Sequence record: PV029745.1
DNA: 64,000 bases
Reading direction: 5' to 3' (one strand)
Shown: positions 10,566 to 21,763 of the stretch, piece after piece
Position numbering within the stretch: position 1 is the stretch's first letter
Layout of the letters: each line of letters begins with the position of its first letter
Notes under the pieces: model-generated
The model's input: only the letters and a program-made list of their open reading frames with translations
The model's database searches: none
What the model was told of the DNA's origin: nothing
Made by a program: the position numbers and the translations under genes

Positions 10566-10642
10566 GGGCCTATAGCTCAGTTGGTTAGAGCAGGCGACTC
10601 ATAATCGCTTGGTCGCAGGTTCAAGTCCTGCTGGGCCCACCA
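10566..10642 (+). tRNA. tRNA with CAT anticodon, most likely tRNA-Ile2 (lysidine type)
   Basis: GGGCCTA/TGGGCCC acceptor; AGAGCAGGCGACTCATAATCGCTTGGTCG body resembles enterobacterial ileX rather than tRNA-Met. Confidence 0.9.
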
Positions 10643-10725
10643 AATTAATAAAGCATAATGCCTCCCCTATTTAAGGGGAGGCATTATGCTGTCTACGATA
10701 ATAAAATAAATATCTGAACCGCAAA

Positions 10726-10740
10726 GGTTATCCTATGATC
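10726..10740 (+). promoter_or_regulatory. Putative late promoter of Kelch gene 1
   Basis: GGTTATCCTATGATC; near-copy GGTTATCTTATGAATC at 12785-12800 before Kelch gene 2. Confidence 0.5.
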
Positions 10741-10767
10741 TAAAATGGTTTACTTGAGAGCACACTC

Positions 10768-11775
10768 ATGTTTGAATTACTATTATCACCAGATATAGGC
10801 GAAGAGTTACCCTTGGTTGGATTTAATGAAATTATTAAATTAGGTGATCTACCTGTAGCGTTAGCTGGTACAATGTCATATGTGGATGGAAATACACTGT
10901 ATGTTGGATCTGGTCATCATACTGAAGGACAAACAGCTGCAACTGTGTTCAGACGTTTTACCATATCGCCATTTGCCGATATAGGTGCAACTGCTTCTGG
11001 AACATTCTTACCAGGGGTATCTTTAGGATTTGGGACATTACATAAGAATAACTTTATTGTTTATGGCGGTATTACTGGATGGAACTCGGCTGGTAATGGT
11101 GGTACGGGAACATCTAACTTTATACAACATTTTGATATAGCTACAGGCAATAGGGTTGAGCGATATAGTGGTCCCGTACCACTTTGGGGCACAGCCTCCG
11201 CATCAGATGGTAATGATCTTATTCTATGCGTTAACCCAATTGGCGTAAACGCAATGCGATTAAAACCATCAAGTAAGTCTTGGCTTAGCGGGCAAGACTA
11301 TTCAGGTGGTGCTCGTTCAGGTCAACAGTTATTCTTTTATAATGGTTACTTTTACCATTTTGGTGGTTGGGATAATACAAAGAACATACCTAATCTTGAA
11401 GTTTATCGATATAATGCAACTACCTTAATATGGGAGCAAACACCTTGGATGATTATACCTGCTGATAAAGGAACAATCTGGCAAGGTAATGGTTATGTAG
11501 ATGGGGACTATTTTAATTACCTTAACGCTGTTGATGTCGGCGGTGTAACTAAAATGTTTGCACAGCGTTTTAATATTAGGCGCCGGAAATGGGCTGAACC
11601 ATTTGAACTAGGTATTGGATTCCTTAATATTTCATCTATAGCCAAAGGTCCAGATAATAGCATGATCATTGCAGGTGGATCTAAAATGCCAGTTGGTGGT
11701 GGAGCATATATGTTAAAAAGCCAATTGTTATCGGGTATCTATCAGGTAAAACTAGCACCATTAGCCATTGATTAA
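10768..11775 (+). CDS. Kelch-like beta-propeller protein 1
   Basis: Repeated blades with GG dipeptide and downstream Y/W (LYVGSG, FIVYGG, FYHFGG, MIIAGG). Confidence 0.75.
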   Translation: MFELLLSPDIGEELPLVGFNEIIKLGDLPVALAGTMSYVDGNTLYVGSGHHTEGQTAATVFRRFTISPFADIGATASGTFLPGVSLGFGTLHKNNFIVYGGITGWNSAGNGGTGTSNFIQHFDIATGNRVERYSGPVPLWGTASASDGNDLILCVNPIGVNAMRLKPSSKSWLSGQDYSGGARSGQQLFFYNGYFYHFGGWDNTKNIPNLEVYRYNATTLIWEQTPWMIIPADKGTIWQGNGYVDGDYFNYLNAVDVGGVTKMFAQRFNIRRRKWAEPFELGIGFLNISSIAKGPDNSMIIAGGSKMPVGGGAYMLKSQLLSGIYQVKLAPLAID

Positions 11776-11849
11776 AATAATAATATTTATAATAAGGTTA
11801 ACTACACGTTATTTACATAATGTCATAAAAAATAAATAATACTCAGATT

Positions 11850-11862
11850 GTAATAATATGTA
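11850..11862 (+). promoter_or_regulatory. Putative phage promoter for the tRNA-Asn locus
   Basis: GTAATAATATGTA; matches GTAATGATATGTA (9203) and GTAATACTATGTA (14699). Confidence 0.55.
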
Positions 11863-11924
11863 GTGAAATACTGTAATTCAGTTACTTGTGATTTTTCTAC
11901 AAGAAAGAAGTTGTTAGTAATTCT

Positions 11925-11951
11925 TCCGCGATAGCTCAGTCGGTAGAGCAA
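11925..11951 (+). pseudogene. 5' half of a split tRNA-Asn gene
   Basis: TCCGCGA-TAGCTCAGTCGGTAGAGC-AA: acceptor 5' strand plus D arm, complementary to TCGCGGA at 12731-12737; no anticodon arm follows. Confidence 0.85.
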
Positions 11952-11969
11952 GCGATTGGATAGTTTTCT

Positions 11970-12056
11970 TGGTAAGTACCCGAGCGGTAGCAGGGGGCGG
12001 ACTGTTAATCCGTTGGCGAAAGCCCATCGTAGGTTCGAATCCTACCTTACCAGCCA
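11970..12056 (+). tRNA. tRNA-Asn (anticodon GTT) with long variable arm
   Basis: TGGTAAG/CTTACCA acceptor, G73+CCA, GCGGA-CTGTTAA-TCCGT, V arm GGC-GAAA-GCC, GTAGG-TTCGAAT-CCTAC. Confidence 0.9.
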
Positions 12057-12061
12057 ATTTC

Positions 12062-12085
12062 AAAGAGTAGCTCCGGCTACTCTTT
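12062..12085 (+). terminator. Terminator-like hairpin after the inner tRNA-Asn
   Basis: AAAGAGTAGC-tccg-GCTACTCTTT; near-duplicate of the hairpin at 12751. Confidence 0.65.
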
Positions 12086-12137
12086 ATTCCGTCACATAGA
12101 TCGAACTAGCGATCTATTTATATATCCTAGGTTCGAT

Positions 12138-12695
12138 ATGAAAGAGAAAATAATTAACGGCTATAGGGCATTATATTTACCCGAACATCGTCAAGCCATA
12201 GCTAACCCTAAAATGTTTGGATGGGTTTACGAACATCGAGTGGTTGGAGAAGACACATTAGGTAGACCACTTTACGATGACGAGGAAGTTCATCATCTGG
12301 ATGAGAATAAGCTTAACAACCATCCAGAGAACTTATTGATTCTCCCTCAGTCACAACACATGAAGTTACATGGTTGGATGAAACGGCTCGGTATTGATCC
12401 TAGGAACTATCCAACTAAGCTTTGTGCTGGCTGCGGTATTGTCATTAGTCACCGACTGATAACATTCTGTAGCCCCGAGTGTTCAGCCAAAGGTCGTCGT
12501 AAGGTGGATCGACCATCCAAAGAACAACTTGCCCTCGATGTTACATTGCTATCACTTGTAAAAATAGGAGAGAAGTATGGAGTATCCGATAACGCTATTC
12601 GTAAATGGTGCCGAGCATACAAGATCAATATTCCGGCTAGGTTTATTAGGGTCGGTGCTAATGGGGGTATTAGCACCTTGGTCCCCACACAATAA
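12138..12695 (+). CDS. HNH homing endonuclease-like protein (HNH + Zn ribbon + HTH)
   Basis: YEHRVV...EEVHHLDENKLNNHPENL...HMKLH; CAGC...FCSPEC; KIGEKYGVSDNAIRKW helix-turn-helix. Confidence 0.9.
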   Translation: MKEKIINGYRALYLPEHRQAIANPKMFGWVYEHRVVGEDTLGRPLYDDEEVHHLDENKLNNHPENLLILPQSQHMKLHGWMKRLGIDPRNYPTKLCAGCGIVISHRLITFCSPECSAKGRRKVDRPSKEQLALDVTLLSLVKIGEKYGVSDNAIRKWCRAYKINIPARFIRVGANGGISTLVPTQ

Positions 12696-12707
12696 AAAAA
12701 AATATAC

Positions 12708-12741
12708 TGGGTCCCTGGTTCGAGTCCAGGTCGCGGAGCCA
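12708..12741 (+). pseudogene. 3' half of the split tRNA-Asn gene
   Basis: TGGGTC-CCTGG-TTCGAGT-CCAGG-TCGCGGA-G-CCA: variable loop, T arm, acceptor 3' strand. Confidence 0.85.
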
Positions 12742-12750
12742 AATTCAATT

Positions 12751-12776
12751 GAGTAGCCATTGGCTACTCTTTTATG
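12751..12776 (+). terminator. Intrinsic terminator
   Basis: GAGTAGCCA-t-TGGCTACTC-TTTTATG. Confidence 0.7.
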
Positions 12777-12825
12777 CCGTTAGTGGTTATCTTATGAATC
12801 ATTAATACTAACTGAGAGCACGCAC

Positions 12826-14682
12826 ATGTTCGAGATATTACTCAGTTCTGGTGCAATGGAGAGAGCTCCATATGTACCCTTTTATATGCGAACCAAGAAG
12901 GTAGCTGACCTTCCAGTGGGTATTGCAGGTCCAATCGTTGCAATGGATAACGATAACTTATATGTAGTTGGCGGTCAAGATTCTACTGGGGCTATCCGCT
13001 CTGCAACTGAAATATTTAAACTATCTGATATGTCGATGACTGTTGGTGGAAACCACGCTAGAACTATTTCCATCAATGGAGCAACTATTTATAATAATAG
13101 AATGCTAATACCAGGCGGCCAATTTTCTACTAATTTAGCTGGTCTTTTATCAACGACAGGTGCATTGAATTTACCTGGGTTAACTAGTGCAGTTGAGTTA
13201 ACGGGACGTTTACCACAGACGTCGTATGGGAATGCTGTATGTCAGCATAGAGGGGACATATATGTTTTACCCAGTTATAAAGCCGGATTCTATAAATTAA
13301 ATCCACTTACTGGCGCGACTCTTGAAAATTATCCAGGATTACCAAGTTTTGATGATGTCGGTGGTGGGATATTAGCAGGTATGTCAATTTTTGGACATGG
13401 AGATTATATCTATTGTTTGGGTGGATGGGCAAATAATCAGAACCTAAGAATACATCGATTTAATCTGATTTCCAAACAATGGGAATTATGGCAGACAATG
13501 GACCCTGCGTATCACCATGTATGGCATGGTGGTTTTATTGATGAGGAAGGTTACTATAACTATACCGGCTGGGGTAACCTCGGTCAAGGTAACAAAATAT
13601 ACCTCCATCGTTATAATCCAGTCAAAAAATCTTGGGCGCGCTCGTCGGATACCGGATTATCATATCGAAACATGTCGGGTGTTATTGGACTAAAAGATGA
13701 TATTTATATTGTCGGTGGTACATCTGAATCATTCTCTACTAATTGGACTAGCACAACAAATAAAATAAAAGAAATCTACAAGGTATCTCGTGCTCCCGAA
13801 AACTGGGAACCTGTCCCAGAGAAAACATGGGTAAGAAAAGCAGACATGCCTGGCGGTAGGGTGCAAGCAGCCGTAGCAAGTACTTATTCAGAACTGTTCG
13901 TTATGTTTGGTAGTGATGGTGCAGTAAAGAATACAAACTTGATTTACGATGTATTTACTGATACGTGGAAAGAAGGACCAGTTAAACCATCCGCACGTTA
14001 TCAATCGGCAGCCACAACTGTCGCCGACCAGATTCTTATTTTCTCTGGTAGTAACTATTCTCCAGACCTGTATTCTTATAACCATCTAGAAGACAAGTGG
14101 AGTGACAGTATATCTGAACCAAACGCACCCACATGGCGGACAAACCACTGCATGACATCTTTTGGTAGATATGCCTATCTTTTTGGTGATGATGGACGTA
14201 CCGATAGAGCTATTTATCGTTATAGTTTAGATGCTGCGGCTGGAAGCAAATGGTATAAATTACCTCAACTTGCTCCAGAAGGATTGGCTAGAGCGGCAAT
14301 GGTTATTGTGAATAATAAACTTTACATTGCCTGTGGTTGGATTAGTTCCAACACCATGACTAAAACCATTCGTGTTCTTGATTTGGTCGCTGGTACATGG
14401 TCTACCATATCTAACGTACCCGCCAGCTTTGTTGCTCGTGTAGGTTGTCTATTAGCTGCGATTGATAATAAACTTTACATAGGTGGTGGCGCTAGTCCAA
14501 GCACTGGATTGAATGATTTCTGGGAATATGATACAGTCAGTGGTGCGTGGACAAGACTCCCCGACATTCCTATAAACGGTGATGCTGCTATGATGGCTGC
14601 ATGTGCTGATACCTTATATATCGCTGGCGGTAATAGGCCAAACGGTGTGAAAGGTAATGAGCTCTACGCATATAGGCCATAA
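12826..14682 (+). CDS. Kelch-repeat protein 2 (probably two propellers)
   Basis: About 12 blades (LYVVGG, IYCLGG, IYIVGG, LYIACG, LYIGGG, LYIAGG) with W.....MP spacers. Confidence 0.88.
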   Translation: MFEILLSSGAMERAPYVPFYMRTKKVADLPVGIAGPIVAMDNDNLYVVGGQDSTGAIRSATEIFKLSDMSMTVGGNHARTISINGATIYNNRMLIPGGQFSTNLAGLLSTTGALNLPGLTSAVELTGRLPQTSYGNAVCQHRGDIYVLPSYKAGFYKLNPLTGATLENYPGLPSFDDVGGGILAGMSIFGHGDYIYCLGGWANNQNLRIHRFNLISKQWELWQTMDPAYHHVWHGGFIDEEGYYNYTGWGNLGQGNKIYLHRYNPVKKSWARSSDTGLSYRNMSGVIGLKDDIYIVGGTSESFSTNWTSTTNKIKEIYKVSRAPENWEPVPEKTWVRKADMPGGRVQAAVASTYSELFVMFGSDGAVKNTNLIYDVFTDTWKEGPVKPSARYQSAATTVADQILIFSGSNYSPDLYSYNHLEDKWSDSISEPNAPTWRTNHCMTSFGRYAYLFGDDGRTDRAIYRYSLDAAAGSKWYKLPQLAPEGLARAAMVIVNNKLYIACGWISSNTMTKTIRVLDLVAGTWSTISNVPASFVARVGCLLAAIDNKLYIGGGASPSTGLNDFWEYDTVSGAWTRLPDIPINGDAAMMAACADTLYIAGGNRPNGVKGNELYAYRP

Positions 14683-14698
14683 AAGAAATACCGGTATG

Positions 14699-14711
14699 GT
14701 AATACTATGTA
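14699..14711 (+). promoter_or_regulatory. Putative phage promoter for tRNA-Tyr
   Basis: GTAATACTATGTA, 17 nt before the tRNA. Confidence 0.55.
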
Positions 14712-14728
14712 AGACTATATCGGATTTC

Positions 14729-14817
14729 GGAGAGATAGGAAAATTGGTAACCCCAGCTGACTGTAAATCAGCCGTCCGTATCGGGCATTACTGGTTCGAG
14801 TCCAGTCCTCTCCACCA
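14729..14817 (+). tRNA. tRNA-Tyr (anticodon GTA)
   Basis: GCTGA-CTGTAAA-TCAGC, long V arm, ACTGG-TTCGAGT-CCAGT, CCA; one A-C mismatch at acceptor pair 7. Confidence 0.93.
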
Positions 14818-14829
14818 ATGCGTCATAGT

Positions 14830-14855
14830 GCTCTCCCTTCGGGGAGAGCTTTATG
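14830..14855 (+). terminator. Intrinsic terminator with UUCG loop
   Basis: GCTCTCCC-TTCG-GGGAGAGC-TTTATG. Confidence 0.8.
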
Positions 14856-14879
14856 TCAACTATTACAAAAGGAAATAGC

Positions 14880-15416
14880 ATGTCAGCATTAAGTTTGATT
14901 AAACGTTGGTCGCCCGCAGTACCTAAGATTCTATTGAGTCCACAGGACACGGTCAATGAGACTAAGATGGTCTTAGATAACGAGAGTGGAGAATATATAA
15001 AGTTTAATGACTTCTTGATCCTCCTTCAAAACGGCGTGTACCTAGAAGCCACCAAAGAGATGCACGAGACTTTGTTAGATGGTAAAGCACAGCAAAGTCT
15101 CATTGCTCGACTCAGTCGCATGGGTTATGAAGACTTTGATCAAGTAATGAAAGTCTTAGAAGAACAGCGTGATTCTGTACTTAAGAAGAAAGAATATGAA
15201 ATCTGGCAAGAAGGACATCGCGCTACTGGTGAATCTAGTATAGCCAGCTTTGTAGGTAAAGCTGAAGGTTATTCTTTCTTAGATGCTGTAGACAACTACA
15301 TGAAGACAGCTAGTGCGGAAGTTAAGAAATGTTTCCGTGCTGAACTAGATGCAGCTTATATTTGGGGCTGTCGTTTGTTTGACAATGAAGCCGACGCACG
15401 TAAATCTTTCGGGTGA
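14880..15416 (+). CDS. Hypothetical protein
   Basis: Start chosen from AAGGA SD; no motif recognised. Confidence 0.7.
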   Translation: MSALSLIKRWSPAVPKILLSPQDTVNETKMVLDNESGEYIKFNDFLILLQNGVYLEATKEMHETLLDGKAQQSLIARLSRMGYEDFDQVMKVLEEQRDSVLKKKEYEIWQEGHRATGESSIASFVGKAEGYSFLDAVDNYMKTASAEVKKCFRAELDAAYIWGCRLFDNEADARKSFG

Positions 15417-15419
15417 CTT

Positions 15420-15590
15420 ATGGTTCCTAATCTTTCTATAAAAGCAATTCATGCTCGTCAAACTCCAGAACAACTTGCTGGCAACCGAGAGAAAACTCTT
15501 GAGGCCCTGGCTAAGTTCAACCAGGCTCAACGTAAACTTGAAGAGCATTGCAAACGCAATGGACTTGAAGTACCAATTATGGTTTGTTAA
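15420..15590 (+). CDS. Small hypothetical protein (56 aa, not in the ORF track)
   Basis: MVPNLSIKAIHARQTPEQLAG...PIMVC; starts 3 nt after the upstream stop. Confidence 0.55.
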   Translation: MVPNLSIKAIHARQTPEQLAGNREKTLEALAKFNQAQRKLEEHCKRNGLEVPIMVC

Positions 15591-15592
15591 TA

Positions 15593-15739
15593 ATGACTGA
15601 TGACAAAAAAGAAAAACAGCATAAAGGGCGACAAGCCCTCAATGTAGTTGGTGAAATCATTGGTGCTGTGTTCGAAGCTATTTGGTGGGTCTTGACCTGC
15701 CCGTTCCGTTTAATCGGTGTACTCTGTACGCTTGATTAA
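15593..15739 (+). CDS. Small membrane protein (48 aa, not in the ORF track)
   Basis: MTDDKKEKQHK then hydrophobic IIGAVFEAIWWVLTCPFRLIGVL; TAATAATG coupling. Confidence 0.55.
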   Translation: MTDDKKEKQHKGRQALNVVGEIIGAVFEAIWWVLTCPFRLIGVLCTLD

Positions 15740-15767
15740 AATAATACCTAGTTGATTACAATATGTA

Positions 15768-16010
15768 ACGAACAAAGTTACTTCATCGAAAGCTACCTGT
15801 AGAAACATCTCACATTAGGTCCAGCAGACTGTAGTATTTCGATGTGACCATTTATAGCACCCGGAAACCAAAGGCTAATAGTGGCAAGCCGATGATTGAG
15901 GGAAGTCGAATGGGCCGCCCATACCGAAAGGTGTCTCTTCAGTTCCACTAACTGTCACCTCACGATGGACATTACGATCAAAAAGAGACTGGTTTTAATG
16001 TCCGATATAC
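15768..16010 (+). ncRNA. Candidate structured ncRNA
   Basis: Follows an AATATGTA motif and ends at a terminator; several helices and a possible pseudoknot. Confidence 0.45.
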
Positions 16011-16011
16011 G

Positions 16012-16036
16012 ACTCTCCGATAAGGAGAGTTTTATG
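16012..16036 (+). terminator. Intrinsic terminator
   Basis: ACTCTCC-gataa-GGAGAGT-TTTATG. Confidence 0.7.
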
Positions 16037-16089
16037 TCGTTTTATACTGGGCTATATAACAGTATGTCAAAGGATGTAAAGAGGTAATC

Positions 16090-16380
16090 ATGACAGCTTT
16101 CATGCCATGTCATACTGAGGCTGATATAGACCTAGCTTCAAGAAATAAAATGTTGTCAGAGCTACTTATAGAAGAATTCCCAAATACAGAAGGGATGTCA
16201 ACTAAAGCAGCAGAAGACTATCTACGGTCTAAGGTCATAGATAAATTCAATATTAACCATCCCGAATATCAAGCACATGTAAGTTACGATTGTACTACAC
16301 GTGGAGATTTCATTACGGCTTGGGTAACTCGAAGACTTGCCCTTGTAAAACTTGCTATAACTACAGAGGATCAATCATGA
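16090..16380 (+). CDS. Hypothetical protein
   Basis: GAGG SD, 96 aa. Confidence 0.7.
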   Translation: MTAFMPCHTEADIDLASRNKMLSELLIEEFPNTEGMSTKAAEDYLRSKVIDKFNINHPEYQAHVSYDCTTRGDFITAWVTRRLALVKLAITTEDQS

Positions 16381-16592
16381 ACGAAAACGCACTGTACCAA
16401 GACGATGGACTTGGCGCACTCATTACGGAAATTTTTAGTCGGGATCTGAATAAGAAATTTCAAGAATGGTATCGTCCGATTATGGATGACCCCAGCATTG
16501 AAAAGGTACCCGTTTGTAGAAACGGTCAGGTTGTAAAAGAACCCGTTAATTTTGTAGCCCTTTTGAAAGAATGGTTAGCTAATCAAGATTAA
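16377..16592 (+). CDS. Hypothetical protein
   Basis: ATGA overlap with the upstream stop, GAGG SD. Confidence 0.65.
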   Translation: MNENALYQDDGLGALITEIFSRDLNKKFQEWYRPIMDDPSIEKVPVCRNGQVVKEPVNFVALLKEWLANQD

Positions 16593-16652
16593 AAACATAA
16601 AGCCTCCCTTCGGGGAGGTTATATGTTATGATTTTGACGAAAGGTAATCGTT

Positions 16653-17591
16653 ATGTTTGAAGTTTTGTTAGGAATTGGGGAATATAAAAGTAAGCAAGGT
16701 TGGGTTCAGCTACAGGGACCCGATGTCGGAAGAAATCAGTCAACATCTGTTGTTGTAGGAGACAAACTTTATATCTTCGGTGGACGCCGTGCCACCACTA
16801 ATGCGTTTAACACGGTATCCGTCTATGACTTCATAGCAGACGAATGGAAAGAACTACCAGCTGGAGCGAACGTTAACCTACGTGCTGCTGGTGGTTTAGT
16901 TGGTAATAAATTTTACGTATTCGGTGGATATACAGGTTCCGCTGATACGAATACAATGGTAGAGTTTACTATTGATGGCGAAACTATCACCCCTGTAACT
17001 CGATCCAATGGTGGATTGGCTGTTCGTAATAGCCACTGCATGTCGGCTATTGATAATAAAGTGTATCTGTTTGGTGGGAACGGTGCACAGGGTATTATGT
17101 ATGAATTTAAAAGCTACAATACCGATAACTTTACAGTAGCTAATCTAACACCACCATACCAAATCCGTTATGCGTCTCTAACTAGTCATGATCGCCGTCT
17201 TTACACGCTCGGTGGATATGAAACCGCTAACACATCAGTTGCCTCATTTAGAAGTTATAATGTTGACAACAACACATGGACTGCCCACAAGAATGGTCTT
17301 GTAAATAGAAATAGACATTCTGCCGTAGCTCTTAATAATAAGATCTATGTATTCGGTGGTCAATCTGGTACGAGCTCTACTCCAAACACTATTAACAACG
17401 ATCATATTTTCAGTGTCTATGATATTGAAACCGATACATGGTCAAACATAATACTTCCTCCGGGTAAGATGCCCCCTACTAGATTCTATGCTAATATGGA
17501 AGTCTACGACGGTAAGATTTATTTATCTGGTGGTTACACGAATGGTGTGTACCACAATGATCTATGGGTATACGATCCAGAGAATCCATGA
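16653..17591 (+). CDS. Kelch-repeat protein 3 (single propeller)
   Basis: LYIFGG, FYVFGG, VYLFGG, LYTLGG, IYVFGG, IYLSGG: six canonical Kelch blades. Confidence 0.92.
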   Translation: MFEVLLGIGEYKSKQGWVQLQGPDVGRNQSTSVVVGDKLYIFGGRRATTNAFNTVSVYDFIADEWKELPAGANVNLRAAGGLVGNKFYVFGGYTGSADTNTMVEFTIDGETITPVTRSNGGLAVRNSHCMSAIDNKVYLFGGNGAQGIMYEFKSYNTDNFTVANLTPPYQIRYASLTSHDRRLYTLGGYETANTSVASFRSYNVDNNTWTAHKNGLVNRNRHSAVALNNKIYVFGGQSGTSSTPNTINNDHIFSVYDIETDTWSNIILPPGKMPPTRFYANMEVYDGKIYLSGGYTNGVYHNDLWVYDPENP

Positions 17592-17648
17592 AAACAAATA
17601 CTGGCGTAGTGATTATATGTAAGGATTAGCGTTAAGCATATTCTACAT

Positions 17649-17734
17649 GGGAACATAGGCGAATTGGTATAGCCAGCTGGTTTAGGTCCAGCCGTCGTAA
17701 GACACTGTGGGTTCGAGTCCCTCTGTTCCTACCA
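17649..17734 (+). tRNA. tRNA-Leu (anticodon TAG)
   Basis: GGGAACA/TGTTCCT acceptor, GCTGG-TTTAGGT-CCAGC, long V arm, T loop, CCA. Confidence 0.92.
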
Positions 17735-17743
17735 TTTCAATAG

Positions 17744-17768
17744 AGCCTGCCGAAAGGCGGGCTTTATG
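17744..17768 (+). terminator. Intrinsic terminator
   Basis: AGCCTGCC-GAAA-GGCGGGCT-TTATG. Confidence 0.75.
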
Positions 17769-17899
17769 TTGCAAATTGTATGATTTAGTCTTTTGGTAAG
17801 TACCTTTAATGGGGGAGGCCTTAGACGGTAAGGGAGTAGGAACGTGAAGTTCTATACAGTCACCCCTCTGTAAACAGTCACTTTTCAATGGATAAAATT

Positions 17900-19468
17900 A
17901 TGTTTGAATCGTTGTTGTCAGTACTCATTAAGGTAACAGAAAATAAATTACCCGGTCCCTCTACCTTTGAATACGGTGATTCGACACTTGGTCTGTATGG
18001 TGAGTTAGCAAGTGATAAGTTTATAACTTACCCTCAGTTAAGAACACTTGTTGAACTCGATTCCATTGGTAGCATAAATACCGATGCCGGCTGGATTAAG
18101 GTATCTAGGAATAATGTTGTCATGTATTATTCAAAGACAGCTATTCTCCGATCCATTAGTCCAAACCAACTTGATACCGCTGGTTTAATAGATGGTAGTA
18201 AAGTTATTGTAATTGACGGAAATATGTTTAAAGTCCGTCTTATGAATGCAGGTGAAAATCCTTATTCTGATATTACTACCCAAGGTAATGAAGGTTCCGA
18301 GTTATGGGATATTTTTGGTAACGTTACAACCAAAGGAAGCTGGGCGAAATATACAGATTCTCAACTTATAGGTGCTGAAGGCGGTAGTTATAGCTGGGCG
18401 GCTAATAGAAATACAAATGGTAATTATCTACAGTTCTCGCCTTCGTCTACTCATCCCCAGGCAAAGAATGGAGTTTATGTTTACGACGGACACCCACCGA
18501 CGGAAGCTACTAATTATAGAGGATGGCGTCCAGTACTAGAATATATTCCACCTAAGGAACTTAAAGGTTTATCGTCTGTACTATCGACAGTAAATCCACC
18601 ACCACAACGTGGGATGCCAGTGCTTGCATATGACTCGGATAACAATGATATCTATATGGCTTGTGGATATACAACTGGACCAACTGCTTTCATGTCCGAC
18701 CTACATCGATTAGACATGGATACAAAAACATGGACTAAGTTACCATCGGTTGTGCCATTCCAAGGTGAAACCACTACCACGAATATGGTTTACAGTAACG
18801 GTAAATTAATTCTTCATGGTAACCCATTGTCAACTGGGCCAACTATTTATATTTACACCATAGCTACTGATACCTGGGAAACTAAAAAGCTCGCGGCTAT
18901 TCCAGGTTTGGTTGACGCTTACTACATCGAACGTACAGCCAGTATAGTTAAAGATGACATACTCTATATTGTCGGTGGTTTCTCTGGTCGAAACGATAAG
19001 ATCCATAAGAGTATTATAACGGTTGATCTAACCTCCTACTCAATCGATCTTATTGAAAATATTCTACCATTTGAGGCTTGGCATCACGATCTTGGATTTA
19101 ATGATAATAACGAATTAGTTATTGTTGCATCTCAAGGTAGATTATCTATTGGTGGAACAAATATCACACCAACGGACTATATAAAAATTAGTCCCGATTT
19201 TAGTGCCGCTGAGACCATCCCTTTAAATGCACCGGCTAATAAGTATTCGACGTATAGGTCTATTGTTTTCGGCAACAATATCTATATTACGAATAATACT
19301 ACAACACAGTTAGCATTGGTACAACTTAATAAAGAACCAGAGCTAATCGGAGATCCTTTCCCTACAATTAGGTCGTATGAAGAAATGGTGATTACATCAG
19401 CTGGTGTATATAGATTCAGCGGTGATGTTTCTAAAACAGCACCTGTAGTCGAATACGAAATTAAATAA
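17900..19468 (+). CDS. phiKZ gp131-like virion structural domain fused to a Kelch-like propeller
   Basis: Starts MFESLLS; PGP...GDSTLGLYGEL...GWIK...FKVRLM...GWRPVLE domain, then IYMACG / LYIVGG blades. Confidence 0.75.
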   Translation: MFESLLSVLIKVTENKLPGPSTFEYGDSTLGLYGELASDKFITYPQLRTLVELDSIGSINTDAGWIKVSRNNVVMYYSKTAILRSISPNQLDTAGLIDGSKVIVIDGNMFKVRLMNAGENPYSDITTQGNEGSELWDIFGNVTTKGSWAKYTDSQLIGAEGGSYSWAANRNTNGNYLQFSPSSTHPQAKNGVYVYDGHPPTEATNYRGWRPVLEYIPPKELKGLSSVLSTVNPPPQRGMPVLAYDSDNNDIYMACGYTTGPTAFMSDLHRLDMDTKTWTKLPSVVPFQGETTTTNMVYSNGKLILHGNPLSTGPTIYIYTIATDTWETKKLAAIPGLVDAYYIERTASIVKDDILYIVGGFSGRNDKIHKSIITVDLTSYSIDLIENILPFEAWHHDLGFNDNNELVIVASQGRLSIGGTNITPTDYIKISPDFSAAETIPLNAPANKYSTYRSIVFGNNIYITNNTTTQLALVQLNKEPELIGDPFPTIRSYEEMVITSAGVYRFSGDVSKTAPVVEYEIK

Positions 19469-19507
19469 TACTTCGTGTCTAATAGTATACGAGAGTATTC
19501 AATTTTC

Positions 19508-19585
<78 letters not shown>

Positions 19586-19605
19586 GTTTAAGTAGTTTAA
19601 AATTA

Positions 19606-19682
19606 GGCTCCATAGTTCAGTTGGTTAGAATGCTTGCCTGTCACGCAAGAGGTCGCCGGTTCAAGTCCGGCTGGAGTCGCCA
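19606..19682 (+). tRNA. tRNA-Asp (anticodon GTC)
   Basis: GGCTCCA/TGGAGTC acceptor, CTTGC-CTGTCAC-GCAAG, G73+CCA. Confidence 0.96.
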
Positions 19683-20878: not shown

Positions 20879-21763
20879 ATGAAGATTACGTTTTATGGGA
20901 CTGGAGTTGCTTGTAAGGAATATCGTGTTTATGCATCAGCCGAAATCACTGATCTTAATACACTAACGCCAATTGCAACCATTCCAGCTACTCCGCCTTA
21001 CCGTAACTATCATGAAGTTGATTTCAATGCCATAAAGAACGTTCAGTACTATGTTGTTATTAGGCAGGTATTAGAAGAAGGTTTATTCTTAGATACCGGT
21101 CATACTACCTGTATAGAACGTAATACTGGTGCCTTGTCTAATAATGCCGACATGGGTGTAGACAGGCTACAAAGGGGTGATTCTACATTGGGCTATTTCG
21201 GTACAGTCCCTATGGAAGACTTACCTGGACTAACAGAACTCGTAGCAGCATATAGCTCTCTCAGGAGTGCTGACCTCAAGGGTACTACTAAACCTCCTTA
21301 TGGAAAGTTTATGGTTAACAATGAGGTATATTTCATTCCATCCAGCGTACATAACTGGTTGTATCCAAATGAAGTATATGCAGCTGGGTTTGCAGCTGTC
21401 GAGGGAACACTTGACGGTACTTATATAACTCCGCAGATAAAAAGTGACAGTCGATTTAAAGGTCTAGTTGAACAAGGACGCGATATTATCTATCAAGGAC
21501 ATACCTACCGACCATTCATTATGGATCAGTGGATGTTTGATAATCTGTTCACTCCGATGAACAATAATAAACAGTTACGGACAGCATCTAACTTACAAGT
21601 TAAATATGATACAATAAGTAAGAAGGATGCTTATACAGCAGTTGCGCTTTCTAATAACAAGGCATCTAAATACGTTAGGCAAAATACAGTCGGGGCAACT
21701 ATTCTTTGGTACGACCACTGGCTATTGTCTAATATTGATATCTGCTGGAAGCTGATGGAATAA
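20879..21763 (+). CDS. Probable virion structural protein (gp131-like GDSTLGYFG domain)
   Basis: RGDSTLGYFGTV...YGKFMVNNEVYFIP...GHTYR parallels the N-terminal domain of 17900-19468. Confidence 0.6.
   Translation: MKITFYGTGVACKEYRVYASAEITDLNTLTPIATIPATPPYRNYHEVDFNAIKNVQYYVVIRQVLEEGLFLDTGHTTCIERNTGALSNNADMGVDRLQRGDSTLGYFGTVPMEDLPGLTELVAAYSSLRSADLKGTTKPPYGKFMVNNEVYFIPSSVHNWLYPNEVYAAGFAAVEGTLDGTYITPQIKSDSRFKGLVEQGRDIIYQGHTYRPFIMDQWMFDNLFTPMNNNKQLRTASNLQVKYDTISKKDAYTAVALSNNKASKYVRQNTVGATILWYDHWLLSNIDICWKLME

What the first reader, a model, noticed from the sequence alone, without database searches (positions are those of the whole stretch)
10726..17925. Shared N-terminal heptapeptide MFExLL(S/G) and shared upstream DNA on four divergent propeller proteins
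Seen: the starts are MFELLLSP (10768), MFEILLSS (12826), MFEVLLGI (16653) and MFESLLSV (17900), while the rest of the proteins are highly divergent. Genes 1 and 2 also share GGTTATCYTATGA and TGAGAGCACNCNCATGTT upstream. Inference: a conserved docking or targeting peptide that plugs interchangeable propellers into one site on the virion (baseplate/fibre) or routes them to one compartment.
Basis: partly seen in the sequence, partly recalled or inferred. Interest (0 to 1): 0.68.

Follow-up and report, generated by a model that had tools for sequence, protein, structure and literature searches.

The report
Shared N-terminal tag on phage binding proteins
A seven-residue peptide (M-F-E-x-L-L-S/G/A) starts eight otherwise unrelated particle proteins of this giant Pseudomonas phage and many more in related giant phages, and most likely fixes interchangeable host-binding heads to the virus particle, though the site it plugs into is still unknown.

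Summary
The window is Pseudomonas phage phiHQ (Chimalliviridae). All four starts read MFExLL(S/G). The whole genome holds 7 strict copies plus one relaxed copy (MIEILLS), every one at a gene start (expected 0.004; no internal copy).

- **Carriers:** all five Kelch propellers of the phage and four of five genes with an unrelated ~200-residue "GYFG...GWRPVLE" module.
- **Conservation:** mean identity is 76% in the tag and 10% in the next 15 residues. Codons differ at synonymous sites.
- **Structure:** an AlphaFold2 model leaves residues 1-11 disordered, outside the propeller.
- **Distribution:** verified in 10 of 15 whole chimallivirus genomes scanned (phiKZ gp83 and gp298, phiPA3, Noxifer, D6, 201phi2-1, EL, Ea35-70, RAY, PCH45), also on a third kind of body.
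- **Function of a carrier:** published work shows phiKZ gp298, the ortholog of gene 1, is needed for adsorption to some strains.
- **Upstream DNA:** a late-promoter TATG box plus leader, inherited within the gp298 family only.

Best reading: a virion-docking tag for swappable binding heads. It is analogous to the docking peptide of Klebsiella phage secondary receptor-binding proteins, and I found no paper describing it for these phages. This scan noted the same tag before on an EL-type phage.

The parts
10726..10738 (+). Promoter-like box GGTTATCCTATGA in front of gene 1; TATG at 10734-10737
   Evidence: The phiKZ late-promoter consensus is TATG with G as +1 (PMC4666361). The box is conserved upstream of phiKZ gp298 and phiPA3 gp360.
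10755..10767 (+). Shared leader TGAGAGCACACTC directly before the start codon of gene 1
   Evidence: Shared with gene 2, phiKZ gp298 and phiPA3 gp360 only.
10768..10788 (+). Tag codons of gene 1 (MFELLLS)
10768..11775 (+). Gene 1, 335 aa, ortholog of phiKZ gp298 (weak Kelch propeller)
   Evidence: PHROG 19623 E 2e-218. First 60 residues identical to phiKZ gp298. gp298 adsorption phenotype in PMC12676376.
12785..12797 (+). Promoter-like box GGTTATCTTATGA in front of gene 2; TATG at 12793-12796
12813..12825 (+). Shared leader TGAGAGCACGCAC before gene 2
12826..14682 (+). Gene 2, 618 aa: tag MFEILLS, a gp298-like propeller and a second Kelch propeller
   Evidence: Pfam Kelch hits. Residues 1-324 match PHROG 19623. 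Same-locus alleles in PS119XW and HPP-Temi are 27-30% identical with the tag kept.
16622..16630 (+). Two TATG motifs after a terminator-like hairpin, in front of gene 3
16653..17591 (+). Gene 3, 312 aa: tag MFEVLLG and a six-bladed Kelch propeller
   Evidence: Pfam. AlphaFold2 pLDDT 90.4 with residues 1-11 below 50 and the first strand at 17-20. Foldseek hits to Kelch domains.
17900..19468 (+). Gene 4, 522 aa: tag MFESLLS, a GYFG...GWRPVLE module and a Kelch region; same architecture as phiKZ gp83
20879..21763 (+). Untagged relative: partial GYFG module behind a different N-terminal domain of about 90 residues

Best explanation
The heptapeptide M-[F/L/I]-[E/D]-x-[L/M]-[L/M/I]-[small] is a portable N-terminal tag of chimallivirus particle proteins. 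It sits at the very start of the chain, followed by a variable flexible linker of roughly 5-20 residues and then a self-contained binding head: a Kelch propeller, the GYFG...GWRPVLE module, or a third module of about 230 residues. I infer that it folds on binding, most likely as a two-turn amphipathic helix with M1, F2, L5 and L6 on one face. I further infer that it plugs into a common socket on the particle, so that different heads, made late in infection, are mounted on the same site and can be swapped, duplicated or lost without changing the particle. Shown: the pattern, its exclusive N-terminal position, selection at the peptide level, its position outside the fold in a model, its spread, and (published) the adsorption role of one carrier. 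Inferred: physical docking, the helical binding mode and the shared socket. A candidate partner, by conserved gene order only, is the gp81-like virion protein (phiHQ record 235305-236735, minus strand).
For: 1. Seven strict copies and one relaxed copy in phiHQ, all at gene starts and none internal.
2. Tag identity is 76% against 10% for the next 15 residues. phiHQ 276627 (Kelch) and 235231c (two GYFG modules) have identical tags and no other similarity.
3. Codons differ at synonymous sites (TTT/TTC, GAA/GAG, four Leu codons), so selection acts on the peptide.
4. All 5 Kelch ORFs and 4 of 5 GYFG-module genes of phiHQ are tagged. Of the 120 best Kelch homologs from all sources, only the phage PA1C ortholog carries the tag.
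5. In the AlphaFold2 model of gene 3, residues 1-11 are disordered and the first strand, which I take to be the one closing the propeller, is 17-20.
6. Verified carriers exist in phiKZ, phiPA3, Noxifer, D6, 201phi2-1 (E to D), EL, Ea35-70, RAY and PCH45. The logo from 36 proteins is M 36/36, E 34/36, L5 30/36, L6 28/36.
7. Carriers are annotated as virion structural proteins in phiKZ, phiPA3, Noxifer, PA1C and PS119XW.
8. A phiKZ orf298::Tn mutant fails to adsorb to two wild strains but adsorbs to PAO1 (PMC12676376). In that paper's Table S2, gp83 has 1 insertion site in 1515 bp where about 29 are expected, gp81 has 0 and gp298 has 21 (column meaning inferred).
9. At one locus with flanks 98.5% identical, the alleles of phiHQ, PS119XW and HPP-Temi are 27-30% identical yet keep the tag.
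10. TATG lies within 60 nt upstream of 5 of 8 tagged genes against 18% of ORFs (P 0.007).
11. In a helix M1, L5, F2 and L6 share one face and the variable x4 points away.
Against: The main text of the phiKZ structural atlas names neither gp298 nor gp83. Seven residues is very short for a stable anchor. RefSeq labels phiKZ gp83 a 'structural head protein', which would put the socket on the head; that label is also on the baseplate wedge gp128, so it is unreliable. Whether the peptide is retained in mature particles is unknown. Several chimalliviruses (SPN3US, OBP, Goslar, RSL2) lack it. 'Virion structural' labels may partly be homology transfers.
Confidence: 0.6

Rival explanations
1. The tag is an assembly or handling signal rather than the physical anchor. 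A chaperone or assembly factor, for example the gp81-like protein, recognises it and delivers the heads, which then hold on by other contacts, or it directs them to the assembly site in the cell.
For: The peptide is short and disordered. A gp81-like gene sits immediately upstream of tagged genes in phiHQ, phiPA3, Noxifer and D6, and near gp83 in phiKZ. gp81 has no transposon insertions in phiKZ.
Against: The carriers share no other surface (at least three unrelated body types), so a second common contact is hard to see. gp81 itself is annotated as a virion protein.
Confidence: 0.17
2. The tag is a capsid-targeting sequence like that of T4 internal proteins. It would load the proteins inside the head for ejection into the host.
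For: T4 internal proteins share a short N-terminal peptide on otherwise unrelated bodies (own knowledge). phiKZ gp83 carries a RefSeq note 'structural head protein'.
Against: Loss of gp298 gives an adsorption defect, an outside function. Kelch and lectin-like heads suit surface binding. M-F-E does not fit the A-X-E type motif that PMC5694885 reports for the SPN3US prohead protease and calls analogous to those of phiKZ and 201phi2-1 (S/A/G-X-E for phiKZ is my own recollection). The 'head' note is also on baseplate wedge gp128.
Confidence: 0.07
3. There is no peptide function. The shared start would be a relic of common ancestry or a feature of the mRNA such as translation initiation or a recombination joint.
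For: Genes 1 and 2 are true paralogs and also share promoter and leader.
Against: The residues are kept while codons vary. The upstream DNA is not shared by the other carriers. The tag persists across genera on bodies with no detectable similarity. The motif never occurs internally. Twenty-one partly degenerate bases are too few for homologous exchange.
Confidence: 0.05

Closest known systems
Conserved docking peptide of secondary receptor-binding proteins in Klebsiella podophages (KP32, K11, KP34; PMC6872550, PMC13352976)
   Same: A short conserved N-terminal peptide heads otherwise variable host-binding proteins and is the element that attaches them to the particle, which allows heads to be exchanged.
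   Different: There the partner is known (the branching, T4gp10-like domain of the primary protein), the heads are depolymerase-containing receptor-binding proteins (trimeric tailspikes by my own knowledge), and there is one secondary protein per phage. Here the heads are propellers and other domains, up to eight per genome, the sequence is unrelated, the phages are giant myoviruses and the partner is unknown.
phiKZ gp298, conditionally essential adsorption factor (bioRxiv 10.1101/2025.11.23.690004)
   Same: Gene 1 is its ortholog, with the same length and an identical N-terminus over 60 residues.
   Different: In the passages that my term searches of that paper returned, the N-terminal peptide, its presence on gp83 and its spread to other folds and genera are not mentioned.
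Capsid targeting sequence of T4 internal proteins (own knowledge)
   Same: A roughly ten-residue N-terminal address label on polymorphic, unrelated proteins that brings them into the particle.
   Different: The T4 label loads proteins inside the head and is cut off by the prohead protease. Here the one tested carrier acts in adsorption and the tag does not fit the protease motif.
gp131-like N-terminal domains of phiKZ fibre proteins gp131, gp133, gp134, gp135 (PMC13250141)
   Same: A common N-terminal attachment module precedes different C-terminal heads, one of them a seven-bladed propeller, at the baseplate periphery of the same phage group.
   Different: That module is a folded domain plus a helix bundle, not a heptapeptide. 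gp131-135 do not carry the tag.
12-residue N-terminal tag of 121Q/PBECO4-type jumbo coliphages
   Same: A constant N-terminal peptide on many tandem propeller or glycine-rich bodies, read there as a virion-loading tag.
   Different: Different sequence, length and phage group. I did not test those notes.

Membership tests
Kelch-repeat beta-propeller (Pfam Kelch_1, Kelch_6 and relatives) | Kelch repeat models matched above the curated score | tested here: met
   Genes 2, 3 and 4 and phiHQ 276627 score above the cut-offs. Gene 1 stays below them (Kelch_6 20.0 against 25.3).
Kelch-repeat beta-propeller (Pfam Kelch_1, Kelch_6 and relatives) | Six-bladed propeller fold | tested here: met
   Gene 3: AlphaFold2 pLDDT 90.4. 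Foldseek hits to LZTR1, KLHL12 and KEAP1 Kelch domains, E down to 5.5e-21 and TM about 0.8. Not modelled for the other genes.
phiKZ gp298 family (PHROG 19623) | Full-length match to the family profile | tested here: met
   Gene 1: 1-335 on 1-335, E 2e-218. Gene 2 residues 1-324: E 2e-26.
phiKZ gp298 family (PHROG 19623) | Needed for adsorption to particular host strains | not testable with these tools
   Published for phiKZ gp298 only.
Docking peptide of secondary receptor-binding proteins (Klebsiella podophage type) | Short conserved N-terminal peptide on otherwise variable binding proteins | tested here: met
Docking peptide of secondary receptor-binding proteins (Klebsiella podophage type) | Identified partner domain (branching, T4gp10-like domain) in a primary protein | not tested
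This is therefore 'works like', not membership.
T4-type capsid targeting sequence | Tag ends at a prohead-protease site (A-X-E type; S/A/G-X-E for phiKZ by my own knowledge) | tested here: not met
   By inspection, the only Glu in the tag is E3, preceded by M-F, and none of 36 tags has a small residue at position 1. A-X-E motif for SPN3US, stated to be analogous in phiKZ and 201phi2-1: PMC5694885.
T4-type capsid targeting sequence | Carrier located inside the head | not testable with these tools
   Only unreliable RefSeq notes exist.
Sec, Tat or lipoprotein signal peptide | Positively charged n-region, hydrophobic core of 10 or more residues, cleavage site or lipobox | tested here: not met
   By inspection of 36 N-termini: an acidic residue at position 3, a hydrophobic run of 3-4 residues, no Cys.

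The most novel reading that the evidence does not exclude
The heptapeptide is a universal plug for one multi-copy socket on the chimallivirus particle, possibly formed by the essential gp81-like virion protein encoded just upstream of tagged genes in four genera. Each phage would then display a mixed, freely exchangeable set of propeller and lectin-like heads. Different heads would serve different hosts: in phiKZ, gp83 for PAO1 and gp298 for other strains. That would be a modular display system specific to nucleus-forming giant phages and not yet described in the literature I could search.
Probability: 0.3. Interest if true: 0.8.

Novelty: new variant of a known kind. Interest (0 to 1): 0.62.

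Why it matters
Host recognition by phiKZ-like phages is poorly understood. The published phiKZ atlas text I searched does not mention gp298 or gp83, yet gp298 decides adsorption to some clinical and environmental strains. A seven-residue label that marks every accessory binding head has three uses:

- It gives a one-line rule for finding the host-range genes of any chimallivirus: 8 in phiHQ, 2 in phiKZ, 5-8 in D6, RAY and PCH45.
- It corrects start-codon calls.
- It turns 'where do these proteins sit' into a testable question, because one peptide and one socket have to be found.

It also explains how the tRNA-rich variable region can gain, lose and replace heads without touching the particle.

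Tried and rejected
- **Complex prediction, gp81-like C-terminal domain with gene 3:** I did not send that protein to any further tool.
- **Complex prediction, gene 4 with gene 3:** No verdict exists on any binding.
- **Second structure prediction (gene 4, to see the GYFG module and its tag):** The fold of the GYFG module therefore remains unknown.
- **Other searches on the GYFG module:** Pfam, the PDB sequence search and the protein atlas gave nothing for it.
- **Velcro-strand idea (tag as the closing strand of the propeller):** rejected. My inference is that the closing strand is 17-20, and the tag also heads non-propeller proteins.
- **Motif-like stretches in phiKZ gp128-146:** none in the 14 proteins checked, which include gp143, the one DUF7941 protein among them.
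- **phiHQ 92761-95916 against phiKZ gp146:** no similarity.
- **Searches for relatives:** the IMG/VR scan for gene 3 found nothing. Alignment A2 was too diverse for a scan. The word search with the gene 4 N-terminal part gave only 3 hits.
- **Loose DNA pattern on Goslar, CR5 and RSL2:** not above its control, and the candidates checked were short spurious ORFs.
- **RNA-library contigs of a relative:** they cover the gene 1 ortholog from about 10741-10749 to 11792, but contigs cannot prove a start at the TATG.
- **Literature:** no paper holds the strings MFELLL, MFEILL, MFExLL or MFESLL. The 201phi2-1 virion proteome paper is not held.
Full report
**Identity of the window.** The window equals bases 1-64000 of Pseudomonas phage phiHQ (PV029745.1, 300,578 bp, Chimalliviridae). 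It is 100% identical over the query, and window and record coordinates coincide. Closest relatives are PA1C, phiLBG22, BRkr, PS119XW and HHBS36_1. phiKZ shares 23% of the 10-kb region at 90% identity. The region holds eight tRNA genes and one HNH endonuclease gene between the four flagged genes.

**The observation.**
- The four genes start as reported.
- A DNA pattern for M-F-E-x-L-L found 7 places in the whole phiHQ record, all at annotated gene starts. The reversed control pattern found none.
- After rebuilding the genome from fetched pieces, a six-frame census gave the same 7 strict copies. A relaxed pattern added one true member, 299842 (MIEILLSV, 216 aa).
- About 0.004 strict copies are expected among 400 genes. 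No internal copy exists, where 1.2 are expected.
- The four members outside the window are:
  - 276627 (305 aa, Kelch).
  - 235231c (422 aa, two copies of a ~200-residue module with the landmarks GYFG and GWRPVLE).
  - 299842 (one such module).
  - 90715. This one is not a 48-residue gene. It is the head of a 300-residue gene broken by a single in-frame stop at codon 49.

**What carries the tag.**
- All five Kelch ORFs of phiHQ are tagged, and no untagged Kelch ORF exists.
- Four of the five GYFG-module genes are tagged. The fifth (window 20879-21763) has another N-terminal domain instead.
- Pairwise, the tag is 76% identical and the next 15 residues 10%. The Kelch protein 276627 and the GYFG protein 235231c have identical tags and nothing else in common.
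- Genes 1 and 2 are real paralogs (28% over 298 residues; both match PHROG 19623).

**The tag is not part of the fold.**
- An AlphaFold2 model of gene 3, built with 62 aligned sequences, has mean pLDDT 90.4.
- Residues 1-11 are below 50 and without secondary structure. The first strand is at residues 17-20; I take it to be the one that closes the propeller.
- The model is an ordinary six-bladed Kelch propeller.
- Among the 120 best Kelch homologs in a 5.8-billion-protein collection, only the PA1C ortholog starts with the tag.

**Selection acts on the peptide.** Codons differ among copies (TTT/TTC, GAA/GAG, CTA/TTA/TTG/CTG/CTC) while the residues stay.

**Spread across the family.**

| Phage | Verified tagged proteins |
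|---|---|
| phiKZ | gp83, gp298 |
| phiPA3 | gp080, gp081, gp082 (from 71348), gp083, gp238, gp360 |
| Noxifer | gp078, gp079, gp136, gp207 |
| D6 | eight |
| 201phi2-1 | MIDLMLS, MIDLLMT |
| EL | MIEALLF, 500 aa |
| Ea35-70 | three |
| RAY | five |
| PCH45 | six |

- PS119XW and HPP-Temi also carry tagged genes at the locus examined.
- None was verified in SPN3US, OBP, Goslar or RSL2.
- The logo from 36 proteins is M1 36, F/L/I/M at 2, E3 34 and D 2, x4 free, L5 30, L6 28, S/G/A/T at 7 in 33.
- In D6, Noxifer and PCH45 the tag also heads a third body of about 230 residues that starts with a DVIF-like motif.

**Function of the carriers.**
- A phiKZ transposon study reports that orf298::Tn adsorbs to PAO1 but not to isolates PA1032 and Env201. 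It calls gp298 a low-abundance, tail-associated adsorption factor (PMC12676376).
- In its Table S2 (filtered insertions, central 80% of each gene) gp298 has 21 insertion sites, gp83 has one site in 1515 bp and gp81 has none. The genome-wide average is one site per 42 bp. The meaning of the columns is my inference from the numbers.
- So the second tagged protein of phiKZ behaves like a needed gene on PAO1. This fits, but does not prove, 'different heads for different hosts'.
- The main text of the phiKZ structural atlas mentions neither gp298 nor gp83. Its fibres are built from gp131, gp133, gp134 and gp135, which do not carry the tag.
- The RefSeq note 'structural head protein' on gp83 is not reliable. 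The same note is on gp128, which the atlas shows to be a baseplate wedge protein.

**Turnover with the tag kept.**
- Between the same tRNA genes, phiHQ has gene 1, an HNH gene and gene 2.
- PS119XW has one 631-residue double propeller there, and HPP-Temi a 615-residue one.
- These alleles are 27-30% identical, but all start MFE(I/L)LL(S/A). The phiHQ and PS119XW flanks are 98.5% identical in DNA.

**The upstream DNA.**
- phiKZ late promoters have the consensus TATG, with G as the start point (PMC4666361).
- The shared box of genes 1 and 2 contains this TATG 33-34 bases before the start codon. It is followed by a shared leader.
- The same box and leader stand before phiKZ gp298 and phiPA3 gp360, but not before the other tagged genes.
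- TATG within 60 bases upstream is found for 5 of 8 tagged genes against 18% of long ORFs (P 0.007).
- RNA-library contigs of a relative cover the gene 1 ortholog from about 10741-10749 onward. Contigs cannot prove a start.
- The upstream similarity is therefore a late promoter and leader inherited within one paralog family.

**Likely mechanism (inferred).**
- In a helix, M1, L5, F2 and L6 lie on one face, and E3, S7 and the free position 4 on the other. With a polar residue at position 4 the helical hydrophobic moment is 0.47-0.54 against 0.08-0.17 for a strand.
- A bulky second residue should keep Met1 in place (own knowledge).
- I therefore propose a short amphipathic helix that forms on binding in a hydrophobic groove of a particle protein, tethering the head by a flexible linker.

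**A candidate partner.**
- A gp81-like virion protein (PHROG 18270) is encoded immediately upstream of tagged genes in phiHQ, phiPA3, Noxifer and D6, and two genes away in phiKZ.
- It was found in all five Pseudomonas phage genomes first examined and in 201phi2-1, weakly in EL, and not in SPN3US, OBP or Ea35-70.
- This is gene order and co-occurrence among related phages only.

**Comparison with what is known.**
- The nearest described principle is the conserved docking peptide of secondary receptor-binding proteins of Klebsiella podophages (PMC6872550, PMC13352976).
- T4's capsid targeting sequence is a second analogue.
- No paper in the searchable library contains the tag strings.
- This scan's own notes, unchecked, report the same tag on an EL-type phage and an analogous 12-residue tag in 121Q-type coliphages.

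**Verdict.** The feature is real and strongly non-random. It is best read as a docking tag for swappable host-binding heads. It is a new variant of a known principle, and its socket is still to be found.

Noticed in passing
phiHQ record 90715-91617 (outside the window; L060:6915-7817): A tagged GYFG-module gene of 300 codons is interrupted by one in-frame stop at codon 49 and annotated as two genes (48 aa and 210 aa). Intact orthologs are phiPA3 gp238 and Noxifer gp136.
   Followed up: yes
phiHQ record 235305-236735 minus strand (L054:1498-2928): A gp81-like virion protein (acidic disordered N-terminus, conserved C-terminal domain of about 310 residues, PHROG 18270) lies directly upstream of tagged genes in phiHQ, phiPA3, Noxifer and D6. 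phiKZ gp81 has no transposon insertions in the published screen.
   Followed up: partly
window 17888-17899: An in-frame ATG four codons upstream (MDKI) could extend gene 4. By analogy with the other carriers and the BRkr ortholog, the start at 17900 is the likelier one.
   Followed up: partly
phiPA3 NC_028999.1 71348 and Noxifer NC_041994.1 197618: The tag suggests corrected starts. phiPA3 gp082 is annotated from 71513 but an ORF starting MLELMLS begins at 71348. Noxifer gp207 is annotated from 197561 but the tag MLELLMS starts at 197618.
   Followed up: partly
SPN3US NC_027402.1 about 120.5-130.5 kb (L048, L050): Several paralogous genes of about 470-490 residues share a different conserved N-terminal stretch, ending in a motif like RDNP(D/E/N)L, instead of the heptapeptide. 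This may be another attachment module.
   Followed up: no
window 10566-19682: Tagged genes alternate with tRNA genes (Met, Asn, Tyr, Leu, Thr, Asp), and an HNH endonuclease gene (12138-12695) sits between tRNA-Asn and gene 2. Noxifer gp207 and a D6 Kelch gene also lie beside tRNA genes.
   Followed up: partly
window 11950-12027: RNA-library contigs of a relative join 11950 to 12027 with 15-20 other letters in between. The relative therefore has a different, shorter sequence at the middle of this tRNA-Asn gene.
   Followed up: no
These notes cannot be used to place gp83.
   Followed up: partly
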